Assembly: GCF_006345805.1 (NCBI RefSeq) | Contig: NW_021827075.1 | Location: 1-11,209 of the forward strand | DNA from: Octopus sinensis | Lineage: Eukaryota | Direction: 5' to 3' | Length of the DNA: 11,209 nucleotides | Shown: piece by piece, positions 1 to 11,209 of the stretch | How positions within the stretch are numbered: position 1 is the stretch's first letter | Layout: each line of letters opens with the position of its first letter | Program-made: the position numbers and the translations under genes | Notes under the pieces: generated by a model | What the model saw: the letters and a program-made list of their open reading frames with translations, nothing else | Database searches by the model: none | What the model was told of the DNA's origin: nothing

Positions 1-1388
1 TGCTGTCACTATATAATTATTATATTGGGCTAATCAATATTGAACCTTCTGAATTTGATGATATTGACAGACAAATACGGCAATTGCTTACGTCGCTCAG
101 ATTACATCTCAAACCTGCAAATAAAAGAGACTGTATTTAAACCGGAAGGCTCTTGGAAGAGGGCTTTCATCAGTTGCTTTCAAAAGTGAACTAATGCTCT
201 TTCAGTTCCTTACGAGTCTGGAAAATATGTCAACTATATGCTTACGGAGGGCGGGGATTCTGCGTGTAATTAAAATGAATAAATGGCATTTGGCTATGAT
301 CGCAGGATTTCTATCCTCCAAATATGCAATTATTGATAAGAAGAGTATTACTATGGAGTCTCTAAAGTCCAGTCAGATACAATATTTACAAAGAAAATTA
401 GTTCTAAAGCACTACATTCTGTGCTTTTCAAATGTGTGGATGAACCTAATGTTGATTTACCTGCATCCTCAGAATGGCTATCTAATGGAAATAATGGGCC
501 ACGAAGCGAAGCATGGTATTGTCTTCTGCAAGATCGAAACTTGTTCTTTGCATCGCTGACTCATTATGCAATCTTGTAAGAAAAGCAAGCAAGAAACTGT
601 TGACCACATGGCTACTCAGTGTGGTTAAAATGCTCAACAGTGATTATCTCCGGAGACACAACGAAGTTGTGAAGTGTATCCACTCTTAACTTGTGCCGAA
701 TGTATGGACTCAAAAAAGCAAGACGATTGAAGGGACATTCTGTTCAGTCAACACTGTCGACGGGAAAAGTTGAAATCAGGGTTGATTGTACAATTCTCAC
801 CGAAACAAAAGTAGAATATAACAAGCCAGATATCTTTTGTCCACGACAAAGTCAGAAACGAAATAAATCTAATTGAAGTGGGTTATTACTTCACAGGATC
901 GCCTCAAGCAAGTGGAGGTTGAAAAGTGTCACAAGTATGACCTATTGGCAAGTGAGCTTTCGCTTCTGTATAGCTGTCAAGTAAAAATAATTCCTGTGGT
1001 TATGACATGGGATGGAGTTGTCTCGAAATGCTTCAAAAATATATGAAGAAACTATCTATTGAAGCAGAACGAGGACATAAAATCCAATCCGTTGTACTGA
1101 AAAGAACGCTCGAGAGTATGATGATCGAACACAAGCACGGAATGAAGGTATCTGGTTGAAGAATACGCTTCTGCTTCCAACCGGTATGTGGAGATGGCAT
1201 GCAAAAATGAAGACAACGACCCAATGAATGCTAAAGAAGATGCAATGGTTGAATCAGATGTGGTAGTGGGGAGTAAGAGGCAGCTGGAAGTAGACTCTTC
1301 TTCCAAGAGAAGGAGAGTGGATATCAGCGAGCTGGAGTGAGATCTGCTTAGTTTTGATTAACTATTAATTTATTATTGGTTTAAAAAA
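1..1388 (+). mobile_element. Decayed R4/Dong-like non-LTR retrotransposon, 3' part: RT C-terminus/thumb, CCHC knuckle, restriction-like endonuclease (RLE), C-terminal tail; runs off the left edge
   Basis: Joining frames gives LSLYNYYIGLINIEPSEFDDIDRQIRQLL..RLYLNRKALGRGL (3-170), LLQDRNLFF (~525-548), degenerate C..C..KETVDHMATQCG (~566-625), DYLRRHNEVVKCIH, NKPDIFVHDK..LIEVGIT..EKCHKYDLLASEL..KIIPVVMTWDG (~820-1015; PD-(D/E)xK RLE). Ends at SKRRRVDISELE-TGA (~1341), then a short AT-rich 3' UTR with A6 at 1383-1388. At least 6 frameshifts. ORF-track entries 194..559 and 691..876 are pieces of it. Confidence 0.9.
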
Positions 1389-1875
1389 CGGGTTACCTTT
1401 GTTTTTTATGTCTTTTTGGATAAAAGTTAATAATATTCACCACAAAAAACAAACATAACGCATTTTGACCCGACATAACGTTTTATCGGTTAACTTGAAT
1501 TTTTTATTTAGAAACAATTTAAAATATTAAAAATTATTTTTTTAATTTCCTTAGCCGACTAAAGGTACTTTTTCAACAATTTCCCCCTCTTCATTTTCTA
1601 AATCTAATGTTCCTCCGTCCTGTTTTATCACTCTTGTATGCAGATGTATCTATCTGGTCATACAGAGGATATTTTCTTGTGTTTTCATTTATATCTTTAT
1701 CCATCCGTAAAAGTGCGTAATCTCCTACTGATATTTTCTCTTCATCAAATCTCTATCTTTCCTTGTTTTTATTTTTCCCCCCGCACTTTCCAAATTGTTA
1801 GGTACGTCTTCTTGCATTTTATTTACTTCTCCGCTTTCTGATACACAAAATCTACTTCTTCGTATTAATTTTCTC

Positions 1876-1902
1876 CTTATCGTAAAATAATTTCATAATT
1901 AC
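1876..1902 (-). other. Possible 27-nt intron (phase 1) in the integrase C-terminal linker
   Basis: GTAATTATGAAATTATTTTACGATAAG contains an in-frame TAA. The flanks are not a conserved motif, so support is weaker. Confidence 0.5.
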
Positions 1903-2111
1903 TAGTAAAAGCCAATGAAGACTGGATAATGTAATCATCTAGTTTTTTTGATATCCCACTCCCATAAAAATTTTAAATGGAATATACTTCGTAGTGTCAC
2001 GTTTAGAATTATTATATTGTAGACAATTCTTTTAATAATTGCATGATATTCTCCAAACATTCCATTTGAAGCGCTTGTAGAAGAGATCCATCGTTTTTAG
2101 ATTGGTTAAAT

Positions 2112-2136
2112 CTTAAAATTAACAAAATAAATATAC
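2112..2136 (-). other. Putative 25-nt spliceosomal intron (phase 2, within the Arg codon of VER)
   Basis: GTATATTTATTTTGTTAATTTTAAG. Removal gives CAA GGT CAG GTA GAA CG|A TTT AAC CAA = QGQVERFNQ; unspliced reading hits TAA. Confidence 0.88.
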
Positions 2137-2377
2137 CGTTCTACCTGACCTTGTATACGTGGGGCACATGATCTTCCACATGTGCTTAGTGCCAAACTTT
2201 GTACACATTTCCTCCATCATATTGTTTTTGACTCCTTTCCATTATCTGTTTGCAAGATCAATGGAACTCCAATCATCATAAAAATGTTTCAATAATAGGC
2301 ACTTTTTCTGTGGCGCATTTGGTTCTCTAAAGTTCTACAACCCCCTATTTTGAAAAAGAGTCAATTAAAACGAGAAT

Positions 2378-2399
2378 TTGGATAAATCGTAATAAATAC
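2378..2399 (-). other. Putative 22-nt intron remnant with decayed 3' splice site (AA instead of AG)
   Basis: GTATTTATTACGATTTATCCAA. Removal gives FKW|ILVLIDSFSK, the usual rve W-x-L-x-x-I-D-x-F-S-K segment. Confidence 0.65.
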
Positions 2400-2525
2400 C
2401 CATTTAAAGCTGTTATTTATTTCTGAATATCTTCTTAAATCGATCAAATCAGCAATGTATCTATCTCTTGGGCCTCTTGCAATAATAGGAGTGATAACCG
2501 ACCTTGTAGGTAGCAATTTTTTGAA

Positions 2526-2552
2526 CTGAAATTGAATAATTTAACTAAATAC
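2526..2552 (-). other. Putative 27-nt spliceosomal intron (phase 0)
   Basis: GTATTTAGTTAAATTATTCAATTTCAG contains an in-frame TAA. Removal joins KCDYCQ to FKKLLPTRSVITPI. Confidence 0.85.
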
Positions 2553-2672
2553 CTGACAATAATCACATTTTTGAATTATTTTGCTAATCTCTTCCCAAGT
2601 TGCACCATATATCTTTCCCTTAAGCATAGAAAACATTTTATCTCCTCCAAAATGTACATAACTGTGCTCACA

Positions 2673-2698
2673 CTAATCATAATTAAATAAATTGATAC
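2673..2698 (-). other. Putative 26-nt spliceosomal intron (phase 0)
   Basis: GTATCAATTTATTTAATTATGATTAG. Removal shifts frame and joins KYIE to CEHSYVHFGGDK, the H-x3-H half of the HHCC finger. Confidence 0.85.
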
Positions 2699-3477
2699 TT
2701 CTATATATTTCAGCTTTAACTCTTGTTCTTCTATGCAGAATAATCTGACTTTTTTATTCCTTTGGTATATGTAGGCTATATTTTTTTCAATAAGTATTCG
2801 GTTAGCAATCCTACGTATGTCCTTTTTGTTAATTTCTTCCTCATCATTTATATTTACATCATTTTCATCTTCAATGTTTCCGCAATTTTCCATTTTTTAT
2901 TGTATCATTTTCTGCATATTCATATGTAAGAAATTCTTCAATATCCAACGGATCAAAAATATCTGTGTATCTTGCTATCTTTGAGAAAAGAATTTTTTTG
3001 CAAAAGAATGTTGTTGGTTGTTTTTCGAGAAATTTTTCATTAAGCAAAAAAGAAAATTTTTTGGACAAATATTGACAAGAAAAATGAGGATTCTCCTCTT
3101 TATAAGATAAAATTTCTATTTTCTGATTAAAATTCAGACGAGTATAATAATTACGAGAAAACATGTGGAACAATTTTTATTAATAAAATTCAAATTTATT
3201 AAAAAAAATTTTGAAAAATAAAAATTATAGTACAAAATTAATATTTTCGATGAGAGGAAAACGAGTTGACACAGGTGACGTCGACGTCGCAAACGAGAGC
3301 GAGTCCCCCCTTGAACGGGAATAGCGTAAACCCATCGGGACTTTTTTCGTCACCACGGTCTAGATTTGATCTTTAGTAATTAATTAAAAATTTAGTTTTA
3401 AAATCATTGAATAAAAATCGAATGTTTTTAAATACATAATTTAAATTTACACGTTTATTTACATTTTTTTGTTGTCA

Positions 3478-4239: not shown

Positions 4240-4880
4240 GAACGTGATACTCAGTCAATTGGTTTGGAGCAATCAATGAACATGCTCTATCACTGTGCAA
4301 TTGTATATTGGCCTCATTGACTTGGAACCCTGTGAATTTGAAGAAATTGATAAATTAGTCAGAAAGAAACTTATGAACTTGAATGTGCATATGAAACCAG
4401 CATGCAAAGAAAAACTTTACTTAACGAGGAATATGTTTGGAAGAGGACTGATATCAAGCACTTTCAAAGCTGAGAAAATGTTGCTTGATTTCAAAACAAG
4501 TCTGGAAAGGCGAAAATTTACTTCTCTGAGGAGTGCAGGAATTCTGTGGGCTGAACAACAAGGAAAGTCACATATGGCCACAATCACAGAATTCTTGCGA
4601 ATAAAATATGAATCAACCCAGCACATTGAACAGACACTAAAGAGTCTGCAGATTGAGTGTCTCTTATCAGCAAATTAAAAAGAAAACTTTCCATTCAAAA
4701 TTATTTGAATCACTTGATAATGAAACTTTCGATATATAGAAATATTTCACCTAAATCTGAAGCCATTCTCTTCCTTCTGCAAGACAGTAATATTTTCCTC
4801 CGCAAGCTTGGTTCAAAATGTTCACATTGCAAAACTTCTAATAAGACACTCGAAATTTTGGAAACTCGATGCAATAGAAT
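4240..4880 (+). mobile_element. Second R4/Dong-like non-LTR fragment (RT thumb to CCHC knuckle), truncated at both ends
   Basis: FGAINEHALSLCN/YIGLIDLEPCEFEEIDKLVRKKLMNLNVHMKPACKEKLYLTRNMFGRGL..LRSAGIL..FHSKLF..SEAILFLLQDSNIF..KCSHCKTSNKTLEILETRC. Collinear with, but diverged from, positions 1-625. Confidence 0.88.
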
Positions 4881-4907: not shown

Positions 4908-5640
4908 TACACCCCTCACCATTAAAATCCGAACACTTAATTTTTAGCAAATTTTTAATCATTTTTAATAAAATAATTTATTTGAGCTTCTTTATTTGTA
5001 TTATTTTAACTATTTATATATTTAAGTATATATTCGACAATATAATTTTCAAAATTAAAGCAGAAACGTGTTTTCTAGTGACAAAGAATTCCGAACGGTA
5101 TTTTGTTCAACTCGAATACAATTTTTATTAGACAGAAATGAATAATTTCAAAAAAGGACAAATTATATCTTTATATAAACAAAATTTCTCCTATAAAATG
5201 ATTTCGGACATCGTAAATATACCGAAGACAACTGTTTGGGACTTTGTTAAAAAATATCTAAAAACTGGGATTACGTGCAGAAAGGCTGGATCTGGAAGAC
5301 CACCCAAGTTCAGTCAAGATGAAATTAGGATTCTTTTATCATTATCAACTGATAATTTCCAAACCGCAGCTACCTTGTCTTCAGAAATGGAAAAAATTAC
5401 ACAAAAAAAGTCTCAGCACGCACAATAACAAGAATTCTAAACTCAAAAGGTTTGTATGGACGAGTTGTAAAGAAACGACCATTTCTAAGTTCAAAAAATA
5501 TTGCTCTCAGATATGGAATATCTAAAAAATTTCATGCAATTTCCGACAGCGGATGGAGGAAAGTTATTTTCTCCGACGAATGTAGTTTTGAACTTTTTTC
5601 CCATTCAAGACCAATATATCAATACAGAAAAAAGGAATCT
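4908..5640 (+). mobile_element. Tc1-like (DD34E family) DNA transposon, left TIR plus 3'-truncated transposase
   Basis: TA (4908-4909) then CACCCCTCACCATTAAAATCCGAACAC (4910-4936, TIR-like). ORF from 5138: paired-like HTH, GSGRPPK linker, one frameshift in an A-run at ~5409 (restores VSARTITRILNSKGLYGRVVKKRPFLS), then WRKVIFSDECSFELF (first catalytic Asp). Breaks off near 5640. No second Asp, Glu or right TIR found. Confidence 0.88.
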
Positions 5641-6234
5641 CCCCGGCGTCGTCAAATTGGGATTTGTGGGATAGAATGGGGTATGGCAATGAGTTTGTGG
5701 GGACCTACGAAGTATGATTGCAAAATGCCACTCTAGCACATGTTTCTCATTGTGTCTATCTCCGAACAACCCGCCGACGCCAACAAGAGTCTCTTAATAA
5801 CCTTCAGTCCATTGATCTGCACATAATTCAACTCGTCAACCTTCTTGATAGATAGAGCATCCATTTCTTTGGGAGATGCCATTTACTCCGCCCCTTGCTA
5901 GAGGAGTGTTTGATTGCATACAACCCACTCAAATGAACAGCCACAAAGAAGGAAAACTTGCCAATTTCCTTGTCAAATTCTGCACTGCAGCCAATTAGTG
6001 TCATTTTCTGGAGATATTGCGGGTCTTCGATTAAAAGGTCGTCATAAACAATTTTATATTGTTGAATAATGTGGGACACACTTTGAGAATGCTGGTCAAG
6101 GGAGAAAGGGTAGAAGCCTTGTGAATTACCGGACTGCTATTTTGATTTCTCCTGTGCTACGTTCTTCGGACAAAATGGTATCCGTTAGTCCATATTTAGT
6201 TTTTGTTTAAATCCAAGAATTTTATGAATTAAAG

Positions 6235-6455: not shown

Positions 6456-6721
6456 ATGAACTTTCAAATAATTAAATCATTAAAAGAAAATACATCCCGA
6501 ATTATTCCTTCTGAATCCAATTATAAAAAAATTAAAGTGTAGCAAATAATTAAAAGAGCACCACAAAGTAAATCAACAGCGTGCTCACACGTGCATAATT
6601 TATTAGGCATTAGGTTTGCCATTAAGAAATTAAGATAAAAAACTAACAATTTTTCAAGTTTTTTTTAATTGAATTAAAATATTATTATACAACTATAAAT
6701 AATTTTTAATTTTAAATAATG

Positions 6722-6932
6722 AGTGGGATAATCGGCCCGAAAGCCCTGGAGTTCCTTTCAGAAATCGGTTTGATGATCTCGAGGAAAAGTCACGAGAGAC
6801 GTGAGTCTAGCTGGCTTTTTCAGCGCATTTCGCTCGCGATATTGCGCGGAAACTGTCTATCTATTCGCGCGTCCTCTTAATCAAAGAATTAGCATCATAA
6901 ATTCACTTAATTAACACTCAAACTAAAAAAAA
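6722..6932 (+). mobile_element. 5'-truncated CRE-like non-LTR retrotransposon 3' end (RLE C-terminus)
   Basis: Open frame 6722-6880: SGIIGPKALEFLSEIGLMISRKSHERRESSWLFQRISLAILRGNCLSIRASS*. QRIS.AI.RGN is the characteristic CRE-type RLE terminus. GC/CpG-rich, followed by a short UTR and an A-run at ~6925-6932. Confidence 0.8.
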
Positions 6933-7206: not shown

Positions 7207-8687
7207 AATTTTGTTGCTTATTGATTTTTTGGGTTTCTCAATAAATTTTTTTGGCAATGTTTCTAGGAATAAAATTTTTTAAAGTTTGCTTTTTTTACTT
7301 AACCTTAAAACCAAGAAATATTTGTTAAGTAATTTTTTCTATTATTCTTAAATTGTCTTTTTTGCGTGGTTTTTAGAACCTATGCTTACTGAACAATCGA
7401 CCGACTTCAAAAACAGGAAAGTGTGTTTTTACATTACCATGTCACAATTTCTTGCAATACAGAGGACATGTTGGCTGGTTTGAGAAAAGATCCATTTTCA
7501 ATGCAATGATGGTGAAAGTAATGCTGGCAAACACTCCAAGCTAATCAAAATATAAAAATTAAAGACCGATAGGACACTGGTCACCGGGAAATAAACATTT
7601 TAAGCAACATGATTCAAAAGACATGCGACATATACTACAACAGTCGTCTTCGATGTTCCAGCGTCTGAGAATCAAGCACGAAACCAAGAAAGTCACCGAC
7701 GGGTTTTCAACCAATCAGTTGCCTAGCCGTATAATCAAATAAATAGTTATTCTTAATATCCATTAAGCCACATTTTAAACAACTGTAAAAAGCTACGAGG
7801 TATGAAAGAATTAGACTCTAAGGGCACCGAGCCGATTAAATACGTGCTGTGCGTTCTGCGGATGACAATTACTACTTGGAAATGAAGACTTGTTTATACC
7901 AATTTCTTATTGAAAACCTAAACAAGAAGTGTCCGTATCTCACGTGGATTGGGTTGTCGAATTCGTTTCGCATCACCAACTTAATAGTTTGGTAAATTTA
8001 TTCAGTTGCTCATAGACAACCCCAAATCAACAAGTTTTATGAGATGGGGATTTTGTATCAACGGTATAATTATTTATTAAACTGGCCCAACCCAGATGCC
8101 CTCCAATGAACACTTGTTCGCCTCTAAATGACATGCAACACACAGCAGGGAGAAATGGCTTGAATTGGATGCCACTCCTTCTCTGTATGTACCCACATGA
8201 CACCCGTAAATATAAGAATTCCATTAGTTCTGTGATACACGCCGTATTGTATAAAAGATGTTTGTCTCCTTCCGAAAGACAACTTTGGACTGAATGTTTG
8301 TTGATCAATTGAGTGTGTCGAACTCCGAGAAGATTCAATCCAGCAATCCTCACTGAATAAATGTCAGGACTGGAACCCCGAAGACTGAGGGAACAGTTTA
8401 ATATCCTTTAGATTTGTTTGCCGAATGATTTGTAGTTTCCTAAACGGTTTGCTGTCACCTTTCATTCTATTTTGATTAATAATAATCCCCGTGCAGGATC
8501 AGAGTTCTAGAAGTCCTTTTTTTCGGTAGGCATTAAGTGCCTCCTGAGCGTTTCCATATCCGATTGGGAGTTCCAACTGATATGGTGGACCCCATAACGC
8601 CACGATAATACCGGAATGAAAATAAGAAATCCCTATTTTTCAACTGTGTCGTGCCAGAAGTACTCATTGCCTCGCGGGCAGGGGAAC

Positions 8688-8829: not shown

Positions 8830-8962
8830 TTTGTGATTCATAATGAAACACAACTTTCATTTAAAGCAAATCTAATTATAGAGAAATTTTTGCTTTAGGG
8901 CACTAAATAAATTTTTCAAGAAAATAATAAAATTTAACTAATTTCTTTTTTGACTCTCAGGG

Positions 8963-9330
8963 ACAACTAATTCATTTGATTATGATTTGGGATGGAGTCG
9001 TCATGAAGTTCTCCGAAAATTATATCGATAACTTATCTATTGAAGAAGCAAAGAGGACGCACATCCAATCAGTTACGCTGAAAATGACTCATAAGAGTAT
9101 GCTAATTGAGCAAAAATTGGATGAAGGTATCTGATAAAGAGTATGATTCTATTTCTGATCGGTTTGTTGAGATATCATGTACTGGTAGAGACGACCCAAT
9201 GATTTCTGAAGAAGACACATTGATAAAATAAGATGTGATGCTTTTGAGTAAAAGGCAATGTGAGATAAGCTCTTCTTCTAAAAAAGAGAGTGGATACTAA
9301 CGATTTGGAGTGCAGGTACACTTAATCAGA
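8963..9330 (+). mobile_element. Third R4/Dong-like fragment: 5'-truncated 3' end paralogous to ~984-1350
   Basis: TATGATTTGGGATGGAGTCGTC vs TATGACATGGGATGGAGTTGTC; ATCCAATC, GATGAAGGTATCTG, ACGACCCAATGA, CTCTTCTTC and GAGAGTGGATA anchors are shared in the same order. Contains stops and indels. Confidence 0.85.
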
Positions 9331-9480: not shown

Positions 9481-9569
9481 TAGGAAATCAAAACATTTTT
9501 ACTAAATCAAAGTAGCTATTTATTAGTTGTTACTTTCTTCTCGGCAAGGGAAATATATCTGAACATTCT

Positions 9570-9781: not shown

Positions 9782-10199
9782 ATGCCAAGAACTGCAAAAA
9801 CAATGTATTTTAAGGCAAAAAAAATTGTTATTGAATATCCGCTGGAGTTTTTATTACGAGAGAATGGCGAGTTGCAATGTCAACTTTGCTTATGCACAGT
9901 CAGGTGTGAGAAAAAGCATTTTGTGAATTCTCACCGAGAATCGAAGAAGCACTCAAATTTATTAAGTTTTTACAAATTAATATAATTTTTAGAGAATAAT
10001 TTCTATCAGCCTTGTTTGGACGAGTTACCCAATGATGACTGGTCAATGCAAGTCACTAAAGCATTTATTCAATGCGATATACCCTTGCATAAATTGACTA
10101 TGCCTCCTCTAAAGAATTTATTCAAGAATACTTCTTTGCCTCTTCCTTCCCAATACAAAGCAAGAATGTGCGTTAAACAATTGAAAACTGAATATATTG
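9782..10199 (+). pseudogene. CGGBP1-like (hAT-related) transposase N-terminus with C2H2/BED-type zinc finger; 3'-truncated, one micro-intron
   Basis: MPRTAKTMYFKAKKIVIEYPLEFLLRENGELQCQLCLCTVRCEKKHFVNSHRESKKHSNLL|KNNFYQPCLDELPNDDWSMQVTKAFIQCDIPLHKLTMPPLKNLFKNTSLPLPSQYKARMCVKQL. The CxxC..H..S.KH and AF...DIPL.KL...L..LF.....LPS motifs match the CGGBP1 family. No DDE core present. Confidence 0.8.
9966..9992 (+). other. Putative 27-nt spliceosomal intron (phase 1)
   Basis: GTTTTTACAAATTAATATAATTTTTAG contains the only in-frame stop (TAA 9983-9985). Removal fuses ORF-track entries 9773..9985 and 10016..10303 in one frame (LL-K-NNFYQP). Confidence 0.75.
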
Positions 10200-10496
10200 T
10201 ATTATGTCGCGTCCCATGGTGGTTACGCATCCCATGCTGGCTACATGTCACCTGTCAATCAATCATTTTTACGAGGTCATTGGCTGTCAGATGTCATAAT
10301 TAATGTGGTTTAATCATTCGTTACTCGTGTGGGCATATTTAATATTTTTAGCGTTATTATTTAATTTTCAACATGTCCTCTTTAAAATGTTTTCCCCTGT
10401 ATATGTAATAATAGGTTTTGTAAAAAATATCTCAGAATATCACATACTATAGTCAATATTTTAAATGGCCAAGACAAATACAATATAAATTAACTA

Positions 10497-10791
10497 TTCC
10501 TTCCTCGGGACCGCTACAGATTCACCCCTGTTGCGGCTGAGTCATCAGGAGCTGTTGGCCCAGCGACTGCCGAGTTCTTGCGCGAACTCGGAAGAATGCT
10601 CGCCACAAAGAAAAATGATCCTCGTGAAGGAGTATGGCTAAGACAAAGGATCGGAATAGCCATACTCCGAGGGAACTCGCTTTCCATACAGGCAGCGGGC
10701 TTCCTCAATTGATTTCTCAAATCAATCTCAAATCAATCTCTTCTCTGAATTTATTAACTGACATTATTAATAATGAAAATATTGAAAAAAA
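10497..10791 (+). mobile_element. Young 5'-truncated CRE-like non-LTR insertion with A-tail and 15-bp TSD
   Basis: Open frame 10497-10712: FLPRDRYRFTPVAAESSGAVGPATAEFLRELGRMLATKKNDPREGVWLRQRIGIAILRGNSLSIQAAGFLN*. 3' UTR with TCTCAAATCAA x2, A-run from 10785. AATATAAATTAACTA flanks it at 10482-10496 and 10792-10806. Confidence 0.9.
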
Positions 10792-10814
10792 AATATAAAT
10801 TAACTAAAAAATCC

Positions 10815-11209
10815 ACTAAATTTATTGTCATTGAGCCTCAATCACAAGTAATGACACATTATTTATCTGTTTCAGGGTATCGTGGAAAGATTTAATCAAA
10901 CTTTAACACGAAATCTTTCAAAGCTGATGAGTGAAGAATCAACTAAAAACTGGATCCAATTTATTAAACGAAGCACTTTTACATATAACACGACTATTCA
11001 TTCTTCTATAAATGAAACACCATTTAAAAACTAAGAGGAGTTTCTGGTATAAACACCGTCATTCATGATGATAAAAGTTTTTTTAATTTTTTTAATTTCA
11101 AAGAAAGTGAATGTTCGGATGATTTTTATCATGTATCATCAAAGGATATGGATGTAGAAAATATTTTAGATGTTTCAGGTAAATTTAATAAATTTTTATT
11201 GTTGAAACG
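10815..11209 (+). pseudogene. Second Ginger/KRBA2-like rve integrase fragment (catalytic Glu region and C-terminal linker); runs off the right edge
   Basis: EPQSQ|GIVERFNQTLTRNLSKLMSEESTKNWIQFIKRSTFTYNTTIHSSINETPFK, then a frameshift, then RGVSGINTVIHDD. Matches the PQSxGxVERxNxT / YN...HS....TPF pattern of rve integrases. Confidence 0.85.
10848..10875 (+). other. Putative 28-nt spliceosomal intron (phase 0)
   Basis: GTAATGACACATTATTTATCTGTTTCAG. Removal gives CCT CAA TCA CAA|GGT ATC GTG GAA AGA TTT AAT CAA = PQSQGIVERFNQ. Confidence 0.88.

What the first reader, a model, noticed from the sequence alone, without database searches (positions are those of the whole stretch)
1876..2698. Integrase-type DNA transposase gene split by 4-5 ultra-short (22-27 nt) GT-AG introns
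Seen in sequence: on the minus strand, 26, 27, 22 and 25 nt AT-rich segments (2698-2673, 2552-2526, 2399-2378, 2136-2112) begin with GTAT. Three end in AG and one in a decayed AA. Each removal restores a conserved motif: IE|CEHSYVHFGGDK, CDYCQ|FKK, FKW|ILVLIDSFSK, GQVER|FNQ. A fifth candidate (1902-1876, 27 nt) removes an in-frame stop. Established: Ginger DNA transposons use gypsy-like integrases and some carry introns; introns under 30 nt occur only in a few reduced eukaryotes such as microsporidia. Inference: this mobile gene reached roughly 3 micro-introns per kb and depended on the host's micro-intron spliceosome. ORF callers shatter such a gene (track ORFs 2576..2893 and 2871..3173), so the family may be under-annotated.
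Basis: partly seen in the sequence, partly recalled or inferred. Interest (0 to 1): 0.85.

Follow-up and report, generated by a model that had tools for sequence, protein, structure and literature searches.

The report
Dead transposase gene with micro-introns
A decayed copy of a cut-and-paste transposon's integrase-like gene is interrupted by four or five introns of only 22-27 bases, the kind typical of dicyemid parasites. A diverged relative in another assembly has introns at the same spots, so the tiny introns are real; the element is ordinary, but it probably gained them inside that host.

Summary
The five minus-strand segments exist as described, and removing the first three opens a 157-codon frame. 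GT..AG segments of this size are common by chance in this AT-rich DNA, so the pattern alone proves little. The evidence is comparative.

- The segments coincide with the only large gaps against intronless homologues.
- Removing each of the first four gives gapless colinearity across conserved motifs.
- A copy only 48% identical in protein, on a scaffold of the Octopus sinensis assembly, has GT-AG introns of 27 and 26 nt at the same residue and phase as introns 3 and 4. It also has a 27-nt counterpart of intron 5.

That scaffold (clathrin gene) and the window (ANAPC11-like gene) both carry host genes with 21-26-nt introns. The genome is most probably a dicyemid's.

The element is Ginger2/Tdd-like: TGTNR termini, 43-57-nt inverted repeats, and one H2C2 + DDE integrase ORF. 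Its closest named relatives are microsporidian and intronless.

The window copy is dead. It has stops, about ten frameshifts, no detectable repeats, and the intron 3 acceptor is mutated to AA. No RNA evidence was available.

A second integrase remnant in the window has its own 28-nt intron.

The parts
1534..2893 (-). Ginger2/Tdd-like transposase (integrase-type) pseudogene, from the ATG at 2893 to the TAA at 1536-1534. It comprises an H2C2 zinc finger, a DD35E core (IADLID, QTDNGKE, GQVER) and a C-terminal SH3-like tail ending ...FSRLRKLKK*.
   Evidence: phmmer hit to P0001, E 9.5e-59, 44% identity. tblastn and spliced alignments run to the stop codon. Pfam Integrase_H2C2 and rve hits are below threshold in this decayed copy. 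About 10 frameshifts and 3 in-frame stops lie downstream of 2345.
2673..2698 (-). Micro-intron 1: 26 nt, GT..AG, phase 0, after P0001 residue 76.
   Evidence: Called at these coordinates by the homology-guided aligner. It joins two reading frames into LKYIECEHSYVHFGGDKMF, which is gapless against P0005 LKYIKKVHEVGHLGRDRLI. The site is deleted in the L003 copy, so there is no second witness.
2526..2552 (-). Micro-intron 2: 27 nt, GT..AG, phase 0, after P0001 residue 116. It contains an in-frame TAA.
   Evidence: Removal gives CDYCQFKKLLPTRSVITPII, gapless against CAQCATKRLMITKPRITPII. It is absent from the L003 copy (CPFCQSKRMLETKPP) and from L001, L004, L008 and L009.
2378..2399 (-). Micro-intron 3: 22 nt, GT..AA (decayed acceptor), phase 0, after P0001 residue 158.
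   Evidence: The orthologous L003 intron is at the same residue and phase, is 27 nt long and ends in CAG. The first 10 nt, GTATTTATTA, are identical in the two copies, and the window copy has a 5-nt deletion plus AG>AA. It is absent from L001 and L004.
2112..2136 (-). Micro-intron 4: 25 nt, GT..AG, phase 2, inside the Arg codon of GQVE-R-FNQ (P0001 residue 240).
   Evidence: The GT..AG boundaries fall in the top-scoring tie set of a free-boundary scan. The L003 orthologue is 26 nt at the same codon and phase. A 1-nt deletion follows at about 2098.
1876..1902 (-). Probable micro-intron 5: 27 nt, GTAATT...GATAAG.
   Evidence: The L003 copy has a 27-nt intron, GTAATT...GATAG, in the same variable linker (after P0001 residue 318). 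The L003-guided alignment uses the same donor at 1902. The flanking exons are too decayed to fix the acceptor or the frame.
2871..3173 (-). Upstream 100-codon ORF that overlaps the transposase ATG. Its relation to the element is unknown.
   Evidence: ORF list. The only hit is a weak CENP-B_N helix-turn-helix match, E 0.14. It has no counterpart in L001 or L003.
10773..11034 (+). Second integrase-type remnant, 5'-truncated and of a different lineage (HPQSQG type).
   Evidence: tblastn and tblastx hits. Alignments to P0003, P0015 and L003 copy B.
10848..10875 (+). Micro-intron in the second remnant: 28 nt, GTAATG...TTTCAG, phase 0. It joins ...EPQSQ|GIVERFNQTL.
   Evidence: Sequence read. The same segment is called with three different guide proteins. 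The homologous site is uninterrupted in L003 copy B and in all database relatives.
7437..7714 (-). Host control gene: ANAPC11-like RING-H2, split by a 26-nt GT..AG intron at 7566-7541 (phase 1). It also has a frameshift near 7499.
   Evidence: Pfam zf-ANAPC11 scores 32.4 bits (cut-off 25) on exon 1, and zf-rbx1 hits exon 2 in another frame. Spliced alignment scores 179 against 143 without the intron.

Best explanation
Window 2893-1534 (minus strand) is a dead copy of a cut-and-paste DNA transposon of the Ginger2/Tdd type. Its single gene encodes an integrase-like transposase with an H2C2 zinc finger, a DD35E catalytic core and an SH3-like tail.

In the lineage living in this genome the gene carries four, probably five, spliceosomal micro-introns of 22-27 nt (GTA..AG). 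The transposase could therefore be made only after the host spliceosome removed them. The host is a genome whose own genes have 21-26-nt introns, most probably a dicyemid.

Shown:
- The segments exist, and removing them restores colinearity with intronless homologues.
- Introns 3 and 4 sit at the same residue and phase in a copy only 48% identical in protein.
- Host genes beside both copies have introns of the same size.
- Complete relatives have TGTNR-ended inverted repeats around one integrase ORF.

Inferred:
- The introns were actually spliced.
- The two intron-bearing copies evolved as functional genes with the introns in place (dN/dS about 0.2).
- The introns were gained after the element entered the micro-intron host, because every other family member examined at DNA level lacks them.
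- The host is a dicyemid.

The window copy itself can no longer work. It has in-frame stops, about ten frameshifts, a mutated acceptor in intron 3 and no detectable terminal repeats.
For: Coordinates and junction motifs are confirmed.

Homology. phmmer to the intact 413-aa P0001 gives E 9.5e-59. tblastn gaps fall at the segments.

Spliced alignment. My aligner calls 2698-2673, 2552-2526 and 2136-2112 with GT-AG only, and 2399-2378 when an AA acceptor is allowed. The score rises from 525 to 624 to 666.

L003 copy. It has canonical introns at 10118-10144 (27 nt, phase 0, after residue 158), 10390-10415 (26 nt, phase 2, in residue 240) and 12133-12159 (27 nt). Its score rises from 705 to 798. Nucleotide alignments show these insertions are absent from L001 and L004.

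Selection. Window versus L003: 48% amino-acid identity, pS 0.73, pN 0.36, dN/dS about 0.19-0.21.

Host introns. L003 clathrin heavy chain has introns of 26, 25, 21, 25 and 24 nt. The window ANAPC11-like gene has one of 26 nt. Published values: dicyemid median 27 bp, and among animals introns under 30 bp occur only in Dicyema and myxobolids (PMC6543705, PMC13644364).

Transposon structure.
- L001: 2,272 bp, 43-nt TIRs TGTCACCGTCC..., one ORF.
- L003: TIRs 53/56 identical, TGTCACGGTCC..., at 9483 and 13645.
- Enteropsectra breve element: 49-nt TIRs TGTGG... with a 5-bp TSD TTTAT.
- Pfam rve: 51-60 bits in P0001 and the L003 copy.

Intronless relatives at DNA level: L001, L002, L004, L008 and L009.

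A second integrase remnant in the window has its own 28-nt intron.
Against: - No transcript evidence of splicing could be obtained.
- GT..AG segments of this size are frequent by chance. Decoy dinucleotides and a free-boundary scan show that protein alignment alone does not single out the GT/AG boundaries, except for intron 4.
- The Pfam gain on splicing is small.
- The window copy has no detectable TIRs.
- The eight transposon introns all start GTA, whereas the six host introns sampled start GTT or GTC. The sample is small.
- The window and L003 copies group together with only 20% bootstrap support, so shared descent of the introns rests on position, phase and the identical first 10 nt of intron 3.
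- Host identity is indirect. The only taxon label available is 'Octopus sinensis', for L003.
- Eight of the ten inferred frameshift sites checked lie close to a homopolymer run, so some may be assembly errors rather than decay.
Confidence: 0.8

Rival explanations
1. The short AT-rich segments are random insertions that accumulated in a decaying pseudogene. Their GT..AG ends are coincidence.
For: The copy is clearly decayed, with stops and about 10 frameshifts. GT..AG segments of 18-32 nt are common here, 16 on the sense strand and 9 on the antisense strand. Decoy dinucleotides bridge the gaps equally well.
Against: Two insertions sit at the same residue and phase in a copy that is only 48% identical and evolved under purifying selection. 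Intron 3 shares its first 10 nt between the two copies. All eight start GTA, and seven of eight end in AG. All lie in the 22-27-nt range of host introns. Each of the first four leaves a gapless alignment when removed. The remaining damage in the copy consists of 1-2-nt indels, not 25-nt blocks.
Confidence: 0.06
2. The gene is not a transposon but a duplicated or pseudogenised host gene domesticated from a Ginger2 integrase (as KRBA2, SCAND3 and GIN1 are). It acquired its introns as an ordinary host gene.
For: The window copy has no TIRs. Domesticated Ginger-derived genes with introns are known (PMC2836005, PMC3575427). dN/dS of about 0.2 between the two copies fits a host gene as well as it fits an active transposon.
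Against: The L003 copy, which shares introns 3-5, is bracketed by 56-nt inverted repeats (53/56 identical) with the TGTCAC terminus of the intronless element L001. Both copies are broken. One carries a nested Tc1-like insertion. Both lie in transposon-debris regions.
Confidence: 0.08
3. It is the integrase end of an LTR retrotransposon (gypsy-like pol), not a DNA transposon.
For: The rve and H2C2 domains are shared with retrotransposon integrases. Some NCBI names for relatives read 'Pol polyprotein'.
Against: There is no reverse transcriptase, RNase H or protease in the same orientation next to it. In L001, L003 and L005 short inverted repeats, not direct repeats, enclose a single integrase-only ORF with its own start codon.
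Confidence: 0.03
4. The segments are germline-limited eliminated DNA (ciliate-type IESs of about 26 bp) rather than introns.
For: The shortest Paramecium IESs are about 26-28 bp and AT-rich (my own knowledge). Ciliates also live in cephalopod kidneys.
Against: The ends are GT..AG, not TA..TA. For segment 1, TA-to-TA excision would remove 24 nt and leave the wrong frame (sequence). The exons are stop-free under the standard code, and the in-frame TAG/TAA codons align with F, P or L in homologues, not with Q.
Confidence: 0.01

Closest known systems
Ginger2/Tdd DNA transposons (Bao, Kapitonov and Jurka 2010, PMC2836005)
   Same: A single transposase with an H2C2 zinc finger and an rve DDE core. 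The GPY/F motif is not evident. TGTNR termini, TIRs of tens of bp, element size about 2.3-3.5 kb, and AT-rich target sites with a 4-5-bp duplication (5 bp in the E. breve copy).
   Different: The paper reports introns for Ginger1 transposases (1-4, of ordinary size), not for Ginger2. Here there are 4-5 introns of 22-27 nt. Placement inside the Ginger2 clade was not tested by phylogeny with reference sequences. The window copy itself lacks TIRs.
Intron-bearing Ginger1 transposase genes and their host derivatives Gin-1/Gin-2 (PMC2836005)
   Same: An integrase-type DNA-transposase gene interrupted by canonical GT-AG introns whose positions are conserved among related copies.
   Different: A different Ginger group, found in hydra and vertebrates, with introns of normal length.
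Dicyemid micro-introns (Ogino 2010; Lu 2019, PMC6736024; Zverkov 2019, PMC6543705; Hadjez 2026, PMC13644364)
   Same: The length (median 27 bp, two thirds under 30 bp) and the reduced 5' signal 'GTa'. Introns of the same size occur in host genes next to both copies.
   Different: Those papers describe host genes whose intron positions are inherited from other animals. None of the passages found mentions introns in transposon genes. Here the introns sit in a mobile element whose relatives lack them.
Intronless family members in Microsporidia (Enteropsectra breve ENBRE01_2744, Pseudoloma neurophilia, Dictyocoela muelleri, Nematocida sp., Cucumispora) and in unnamed Logan, ENA and Tara contigs
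   Same: The same protein family: 35-61% identity to the family's intact member P0001, which is itself 44% identical to the window copy. The domain order is the same, and the terminal structure is the same where visible (L001, L005).
   Different: All are uninterrupted ORFs at DNA level (L001, L002, L004, L005, L008, L009).
KRBA2 / SCAND3, vertebrate genes derived from Ginger2 (PMC3575427)
   Same: The integrase domain is of the same superfamily. NCBI named some microsporidian family members after these genes.
   Different: They are single-copy domesticated host genes fused to KRAB or SCAN domains. The copies here are TIR-bounded or decayed repeats.

Membership tests
Ginger2/Tdd DNA transposon | Transposase with an rve (DDE) integrase core | tested here: met
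   rve scores 51.2 bits in P0001 and 59.8 bits in the spliced L003 copy (cut-off 32.6). The window copy scores only 14-29 bits because of decay, but it matches P0001 at E 9.5e-59 and keeps the D, D(35)E residues.
Ginger2/Tdd DNA transposon | N-terminal H2C2 zinc finger | tested here: inconclusive
   Integrase_H2C2 scores 19.4-20.3 bits, below the 25.5 cut-off, in both P0001 and the spliced window copy. The H..H...C..C pattern is visible in the alignment.
Ginger2/Tdd DNA transposon | Terminal inverted repeats of about 45-300 bp with TGTNR termini | tested here: met
   L001 has 43-nt TIRs starting TGTCA. L003 has 56-nt TIRs starting TGTCA. L005 has 49-nt TIRs starting TGTGG. None were found around the window copy.
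Ginger2/Tdd DNA transposon | 4-5-bp target-site duplication in AT-rich DNA | tested here: inconclusive
   L005 has a clean 5-bp TTTAT duplication. L003 flanks are TAATA and TGATA, matching at 4 of 5. L001 shows no duplication. The window copy cannot be tested.
Ginger2/Tdd DNA transposon | No RT/RNase H; the integrase-only ORF lies inside the repeats | tested here: met
   L001 and L003 each have a single ORF between their TIRs. The six-frame Pfam scan of the window finds no RT next to the gene.
Ginger2/Tdd DNA transposon | [quoted passage not shown] | not tested
   No reference Ginger sequences were available. By eye the C-terminal module reads FPLYD where GPY/F would sit. NCBI names such as KRBA2 and SCAND3 for relatives point indirectly to Ginger2 (PMC3575427).
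Spliceosomal micro-intron (dicyemid type) | GT..AG boundaries | tested here: met
   4 of 5 in the window and 3 of 3 in L003. Intron 3 of the window has AA where its orthologue has AG.
Spliceosomal micro-intron (dicyemid type) | Length within the host's intron distribution | tested here: met
   Transposon introns are 22-28 nt. Host introns are 21-26 nt in L003 clathrin and window ANAPC11. The published median is 27 bp.
Spliceosomal micro-intron (dicyemid type) | Removal restores reading frame and colinearity with intronless homologues | tested here: met
   Met for introns 1-4. Not met cleanly for the fifth.
Spliceosomal micro-intron (dicyemid type) | Position and phase conserved between diverged copies | tested here: met
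   Introns 3 and 4 sit at the same residue and phase in the window and L003 copies. Intron 5 is only approximate. Intron 2 is present only in the window copy. The intron 1 site is deleted in L003.
Spliceosomal micro-intron (dicyemid type) | Removed from mature RNA | not testable with these tools
   No reads or transcripts of the source organism were accessible. No spliced near-identical ORF was found in the protein collection.
Dicyemid genome (source of the window) | Taxonomic marker or a named near-identical record | tested here: inconclusive
   Only indirect evidence is available:
- L003 lies on a 1.29-Mb scaffold of the Octopus sinensis assembly, with a compact clathrin gene that is 50% identical to human over the 151 residues compared and has five introns of 21-26 nt.
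- The window shares transposon families and a 118-nt element at 90.7% identity with L003.
- The exact-ORF look-up and the ANAPC11 search returned nothing.

The most novel reading that the evidence does not exclude
The transposon gained its introns de novo after entering the micro-intron host. This would mean up to five insertions of about 26 nt in a 1.3-kb gene, a sixth at a different site in a second integrase lineage, and a presence/absence difference for intron 2 between copies. Every relative outside this host is intronless.

If so, in a genome whose spliceosome needs little more than GTA...AG about 26 nt apart, small AT-rich insertions can become introns at once. These transposon families would then be a rare and datable record of recent intron gain in an animal.
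Probability: 0.35. Interest if true: 0.65.

Novelty: new variant of a known kind. Interest (0 to 1): 0.48.

Why it matters
Dicyemid micro-introns and intron-bearing Ginger transposases are each known. A mobile gene carrying a full set of host-style micro-introns, while all its relatives elsewhere have none, was not found described in the papers searched. It matters in three ways.

- **Annotation.** ORF callers and even NCBI's eukaryotic pipeline break or misread such genes, so transposon content in micro-intron genomes is under-counted.
- **Intron evolution.** Intron positions in dicyemid host genes are thought to be inherited. Here the comparison with intronless relatives points to gain, which gives a concrete system for asking how 26-nt introns arise and what minimal signals suffice.
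- **Transposon history.** The family links microsporidian and animal-parasite genomes, which may reflect horizontal movement of transposons among parasites.

In passing, a 1.29-Mb scaffold labelled Octopus sinensis looks like parasite DNA.

Tried and rejected
1. **Decoy splice dinucleotides.** All 256 donor/acceptor pairs were tried in the spliced aligner. Frequent AT-rich pairs bridge the gaps as well as or better than GT/AG, so score gain is not specific evidence for GT-AG.
2. **Free-boundary deletion grid** around each intron. A 44%-identical guide cannot fix the boundaries better than about +/-10 nt, except at intron 4 in both copies.
3. **TTAA[AT] as a branch-site-like motif**. It occurs in 8 of 12 introns, but also in 54% of background AT-rich 26-mers, so it is uninformative.
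4. **Raw count of GT..AG segments**. These are common by chance.
5. **Pfam, spliced versus unspliced, with frameshift correction held constant**. The gains are only small.
6. **TIR search around the window copy**. Nothing was found.
7. **Rfam and tRNA scans of the window**. Nothing was found.
8. **Exact look-up of the window ORF 2576-2893** in the contig collection. It is not on record.
9. **Third protein search, with the spliced ANAPC11-like product, to name the host**. No candidate shared enough words, so the search was wasted.
The scan was redone with stop-free segments.
11. **Tandem-duplication origin of intron 2.** I compared the sequences by eye and found no convincing similarity between the intron ends and the flanking exons.
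12. **Micro-introns in the Tc1-like elements of L003**. Only 1-nt frameshifts or deletions were seen, no intron-sized insertions.
13. **NJ tree of the family**. It is too poorly resolved to prove that the intron-bearing copies are sisters.
Full report
**Observation.** They are 2698-2673 (26 nt), 2552-2526 (27), 2399-2378 (22), 2136-2112 (25) and 1902-1876 (27). All are 77-88% A+T and all start GTA(T/A). Four end in AG and one in AA. Removing the first three gives a single open frame of 157 codons from the ATG at 2893. The quoted junctions (YIE|CEHSYVHFGGDK, CDYCQ|FKK, FKW|ILVLIDSFSK, GQVER|FNQ) are reproduced, and the two track ORFs exist. Downstream of about 2345 the gene is badly damaged. 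A homology-guided alignment needs about ten 1-2-nt frameshifts and passes three in-frame stops before reaching the family's conserved end...FSRLRKLKK*, at 1536-1534. Eight of the ten inferred frameshift sites checked lie within about 12 nt of a homopolymer run of 4 or more. Some may therefore be assembly errors, but the stops are substitutions.

**Is the pattern more than chance?** The pattern alone is not, and I want this on record.
- The gene's sense strand has 16 AT-rich GT..AG segments of 18-32 nt, and the antisense strand has 9.
- I wrote a small protein-guided spliced aligner and gave it all 256 donor/acceptor dinucleotide pairs. Common AT-rich pairs bridged the gaps at least as well as GT/AG.
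- A free-boundary scan showed that a 44%-identical guide cannot fix boundaries better than about +/-10 nt, except for intron 4.
- A TTAA[AT] motif that looked like a branch site occurs in 54% of background AT-rich 26-mers.

The case therefore rests on comparison with other copies.

**Comparative evidence.**
- *Homologues.* The spliced product matches an intact 413-residue protein, P0001, at E 9.5e-59. tblastn of P0001 and other relatives against the window puts its large gaps exactly at the segments.
With an AA acceptor allowed it also calls 2399-2378. The score goes from 525 to 624 to 666. After removal, each of the four junctions aligns without a gap to intronless relatives across conserved motifs.
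- *A second intron-bearing copy.* The decisive witness is L003, the locus encoding P0004, an NCBI model named 'uncharacterized protein LOC115227152 [Octopus sinensis]'. I joined the flanks of a nested Tc1-like insertion there, which has a TA duplication and 198-nt repeats. That copy then shows canonical introns at 10118-10144 (27 nt, phase 0, after P0001 residue 158), at 10390-10415 (26 nt, phase 2, inside residue 240) and at 12133-12159 (27 nt).
- *Shared positions.* The first two L003 introns sit at the same residue and phase as window introns 3 and 4. Intron 3 shares its first ten bases in the two copies, and the window version has lost 5 nt and changed CAG to CAA.
- *Divergence.* The two copies are only 48% identical in protein. 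Synonymous sites are saturated (pS 0.73) while pN is 0.36, giving dN/dS of about 0.2. Most of their divergence therefore happened under selection for the protein with the introns already in place, which implies the introns were being removed.
- *Intron 2.* It is absent from L003 (CPFCQSKRMLETKPP).
- *Intron 1.* Its site lies within an internal deletion of the L003 copy.
- *Intron 5.* It is only probable. The L003-guided alignment uses the same donor at 1902, and both introns are 27 nt reading GTAATT...GATA(A)G. However, the flanking exons are too decayed to join frames.
- *Pfam.* With frameshift correction held constant, the gain on splicing is small. In the window, H2C2 goes from 16.3 to 20.3 bits and rve from none to 14.1. 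In L003, rve goes from 56.4 to 59.8 bits and rve_3 from none to 21.1.

**What the element is.**
- *L001.* This Logan contig is a complete 2,272-bp element with 43-nt inverted repeats starting TGTCACCGTCC and a single uninterrupted ORF.
- *L003.* The intron-bearing copy is bracketed by inverted repeats identical at 53 of 56 positions, starting TGTCACGGTCC, at 9483 and 13645.
- *L005.* The Enteropsectra breve member has 49-nt repeats starting TGTGG and a clean 5-bp duplication, TTTAT.
- *Classification.* TGTNR termini, short TIRs, AT-rich targets, an H2C2 + DDE integrase-only ORF and no adjacent RT are the published marks of Ginger2/Tdd (PMC2836005). I did not place the family in a tree with reference Ginger sequences.
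- *The window copy.* It has no detectable TIRs.

**Relatives.** A profile search found 40 relatives. Apart from the Octopus-labelled model, two weak Rotaria hits and one anaerobic-fungus record, all the named ones are microsporidian: Enteropsectra, Dictyocoela, Pseudoloma (61% identical to P0001), Nematocida and Cucumispora. All are uninterrupted ORFs. Five genomic copies from the closest subfamily, including one from a Tara Oceans metagenome, lack all five introns at DNA level. In an NJ tree the window and L003 copies fall together with P0020 inside that subfamily, but with only 20% support.

**The host.**
- *L003 scaffold.* L003 lies on a 1.29-Mb scaffold (VCDQ01000492.1) of the Octopus sinensis assembly. 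Its clathrin heavy-chain gene is 50% identical to human over the 151 residues compared and is split by introns of 25, 24, 26, 25 and 21 nt.
- *Why a dicyemid.* To my knowledge octopus genes do not look like this. Dicyemids live in octopus kidneys and have a median intron length of 27 bp (PMC6543705). Among animals only Dicyema and myxobolid myxozoans have such introns (PMC13644364).
- *The window.* It carries an ANAPC11-like gene (Pfam 32.4 bits, cut-off 25) split by a 26-nt GT..AG intron. It shares several transposon families and a 118-nt element at 90.7% identity with L003. Its G+C content is about 33%, against 36.7% for D. japonicum, whose genome is 49% repeats (PMC6736024).
- *Conclusion.* I conclude, by inference only, that both sequences come from dicyemid genomes. 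Attempts to name the source directly failed.

**Mechanism and history.** The most likely account is a Ginger2-like cut-and-paste element whose transposase mRNA had to be spliced at four or five micro-introns by the host spliceosome. The window holds a dead copy of it. Because every relative outside the micro-intron genomes is intronless, parsimony favours gain of the introns in this host. The database does favour uninterrupted ORFs, so loss elsewhere is not excluded.

A second, 5'-truncated integrase remnant of another lineage lies at about 10773-11034 on the plus strand. It has its own 28-nt GT..AG segment at 10848-10875, and removing it joins ...EPQSQ to GIVERFNQTL. Three guide proteins call the same segment, and the site is uninterrupted in all relatives. 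This suggests the phenomenon is not confined to one family. The Tc1-like elements examined show no such insertions.

One oddity remains unexplained. All eight transposon introns start GTA, the published dicyemid consensus, while the six host introns I could sample start GTT or GTC.

**Novelty.** Dicyemid micro-introns and introns in Ginger1 transposases are both published. In the papers I could search and read, I found no description of micro-introns in transposon genes of dicyemids or of an intron-rich Ginger2 lineage. I rate it a new variant of a known kind and of moderate interest. It would be more interesting if the intron-gain reading holds.

Noticed in passing
L003 (Octopus sinensis assembly GCA_006345805.1, scaffold VCDQ01000492.1, 143924-164436): This 1.29-Mb scaffold labelled as octopus carries a compact clathrin heavy-chain gene with five introns of 21-26 nt, amid transposon debris. 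It is probably a dicyemid (kidney parasite) contaminant. The NCBI model LOC115227152 on it reads through one micro-intron and breaks at the next.
   Followed up: partly
window 10773-11034 (+), intron 10848-10875: A second integrase remnant of a different lineage has its own 28-nt GT..AG intron between ...PQSQ and GIVERFNQTL. This site is five codons upstream of intron 4 of the first copy and is uninterrupted in all relatives.
   Followed up: yes
window 8499-8616 (+) and L003 14789-14904 (-): A sharply bounded 118-nt element is 90.7% identical between the two loci, while the surrounding DNA is unalignable. It has no Rfam match even at E<=1. It could be an unknown small RNA gene or the end of a shared young repeat.
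   Followed up: partly
window 7437-7714 (-): An ANAPC11-like RING-H2 gene, the only host-type gene in the window, is split by a 26-nt intron (7566-7541). It also needs one or two frameshifts near 7499 to keep the last zinc ligands, so it is either a pseudogene or carries assembly errors.
   Followed up: partly
window introns versus host introns (window 7566-7541; L003 200-224, 390-413, 840-865, 1109-1133, 1536-1556): All eight transposon introns begin GTA(T/A). All six host introns sampled begin GTT or GTC. The sample is small and the difference is unexplained.
   Followed up: no
protein family (P0003, P0008, P0012, P0014, P0016, P0019, P0021, P0025, P0026): Nearly all the named relatives of this transposase are from Microsporidia, and one unnamed relative is from a Tara Oceans metagenome. 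This hints at horizontal movement of the family among parasites and their hosts.
   Followed up: partly
L005 450-3903 (Enteropsectra breve JALPMN010000416.1): A complete 3,454-bp element with 49-nt TIRs (TGTGGTGCGCC...) and a clean 5-bp target-site duplication, TTTAT.
   Followed up: yes
L003 10482-11966: A Tc1-like element with 198-nt TIRs (96% identical) and a TA duplication is nested inside the intron-bearing Ginger2-like copy. Its transposase frame has 1-nt shifts but no micro-introns.
   Followed up: partly
window 974-1339 and 8954-9312; 3-690 and 4280-4675; 6716-6877 and 10494-10709: These are repeated fragments of retroelement-like ORFs (70% nucleotide identity for the first pair). A Tc1/mariner remnant lies at 5132-5733. 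Most of the window is transposon debris.
   Followed up: no
window 2871-3173 (-): A 100-codon ORF lies just upstream of, and overlaps, the transposase start. It has only a faint CENP-B-type helix-turn-helix match and no counterpart in L001 or L003.
   Followed up: no
L003 5778-6287 and 8436-8870 (+): Another integrase copy ('copy B', HPQSQG type) is split by about 2.2 kb of inserted DNA. It has no introns at the positions of introns 3 and 4.
   Followed up: partly
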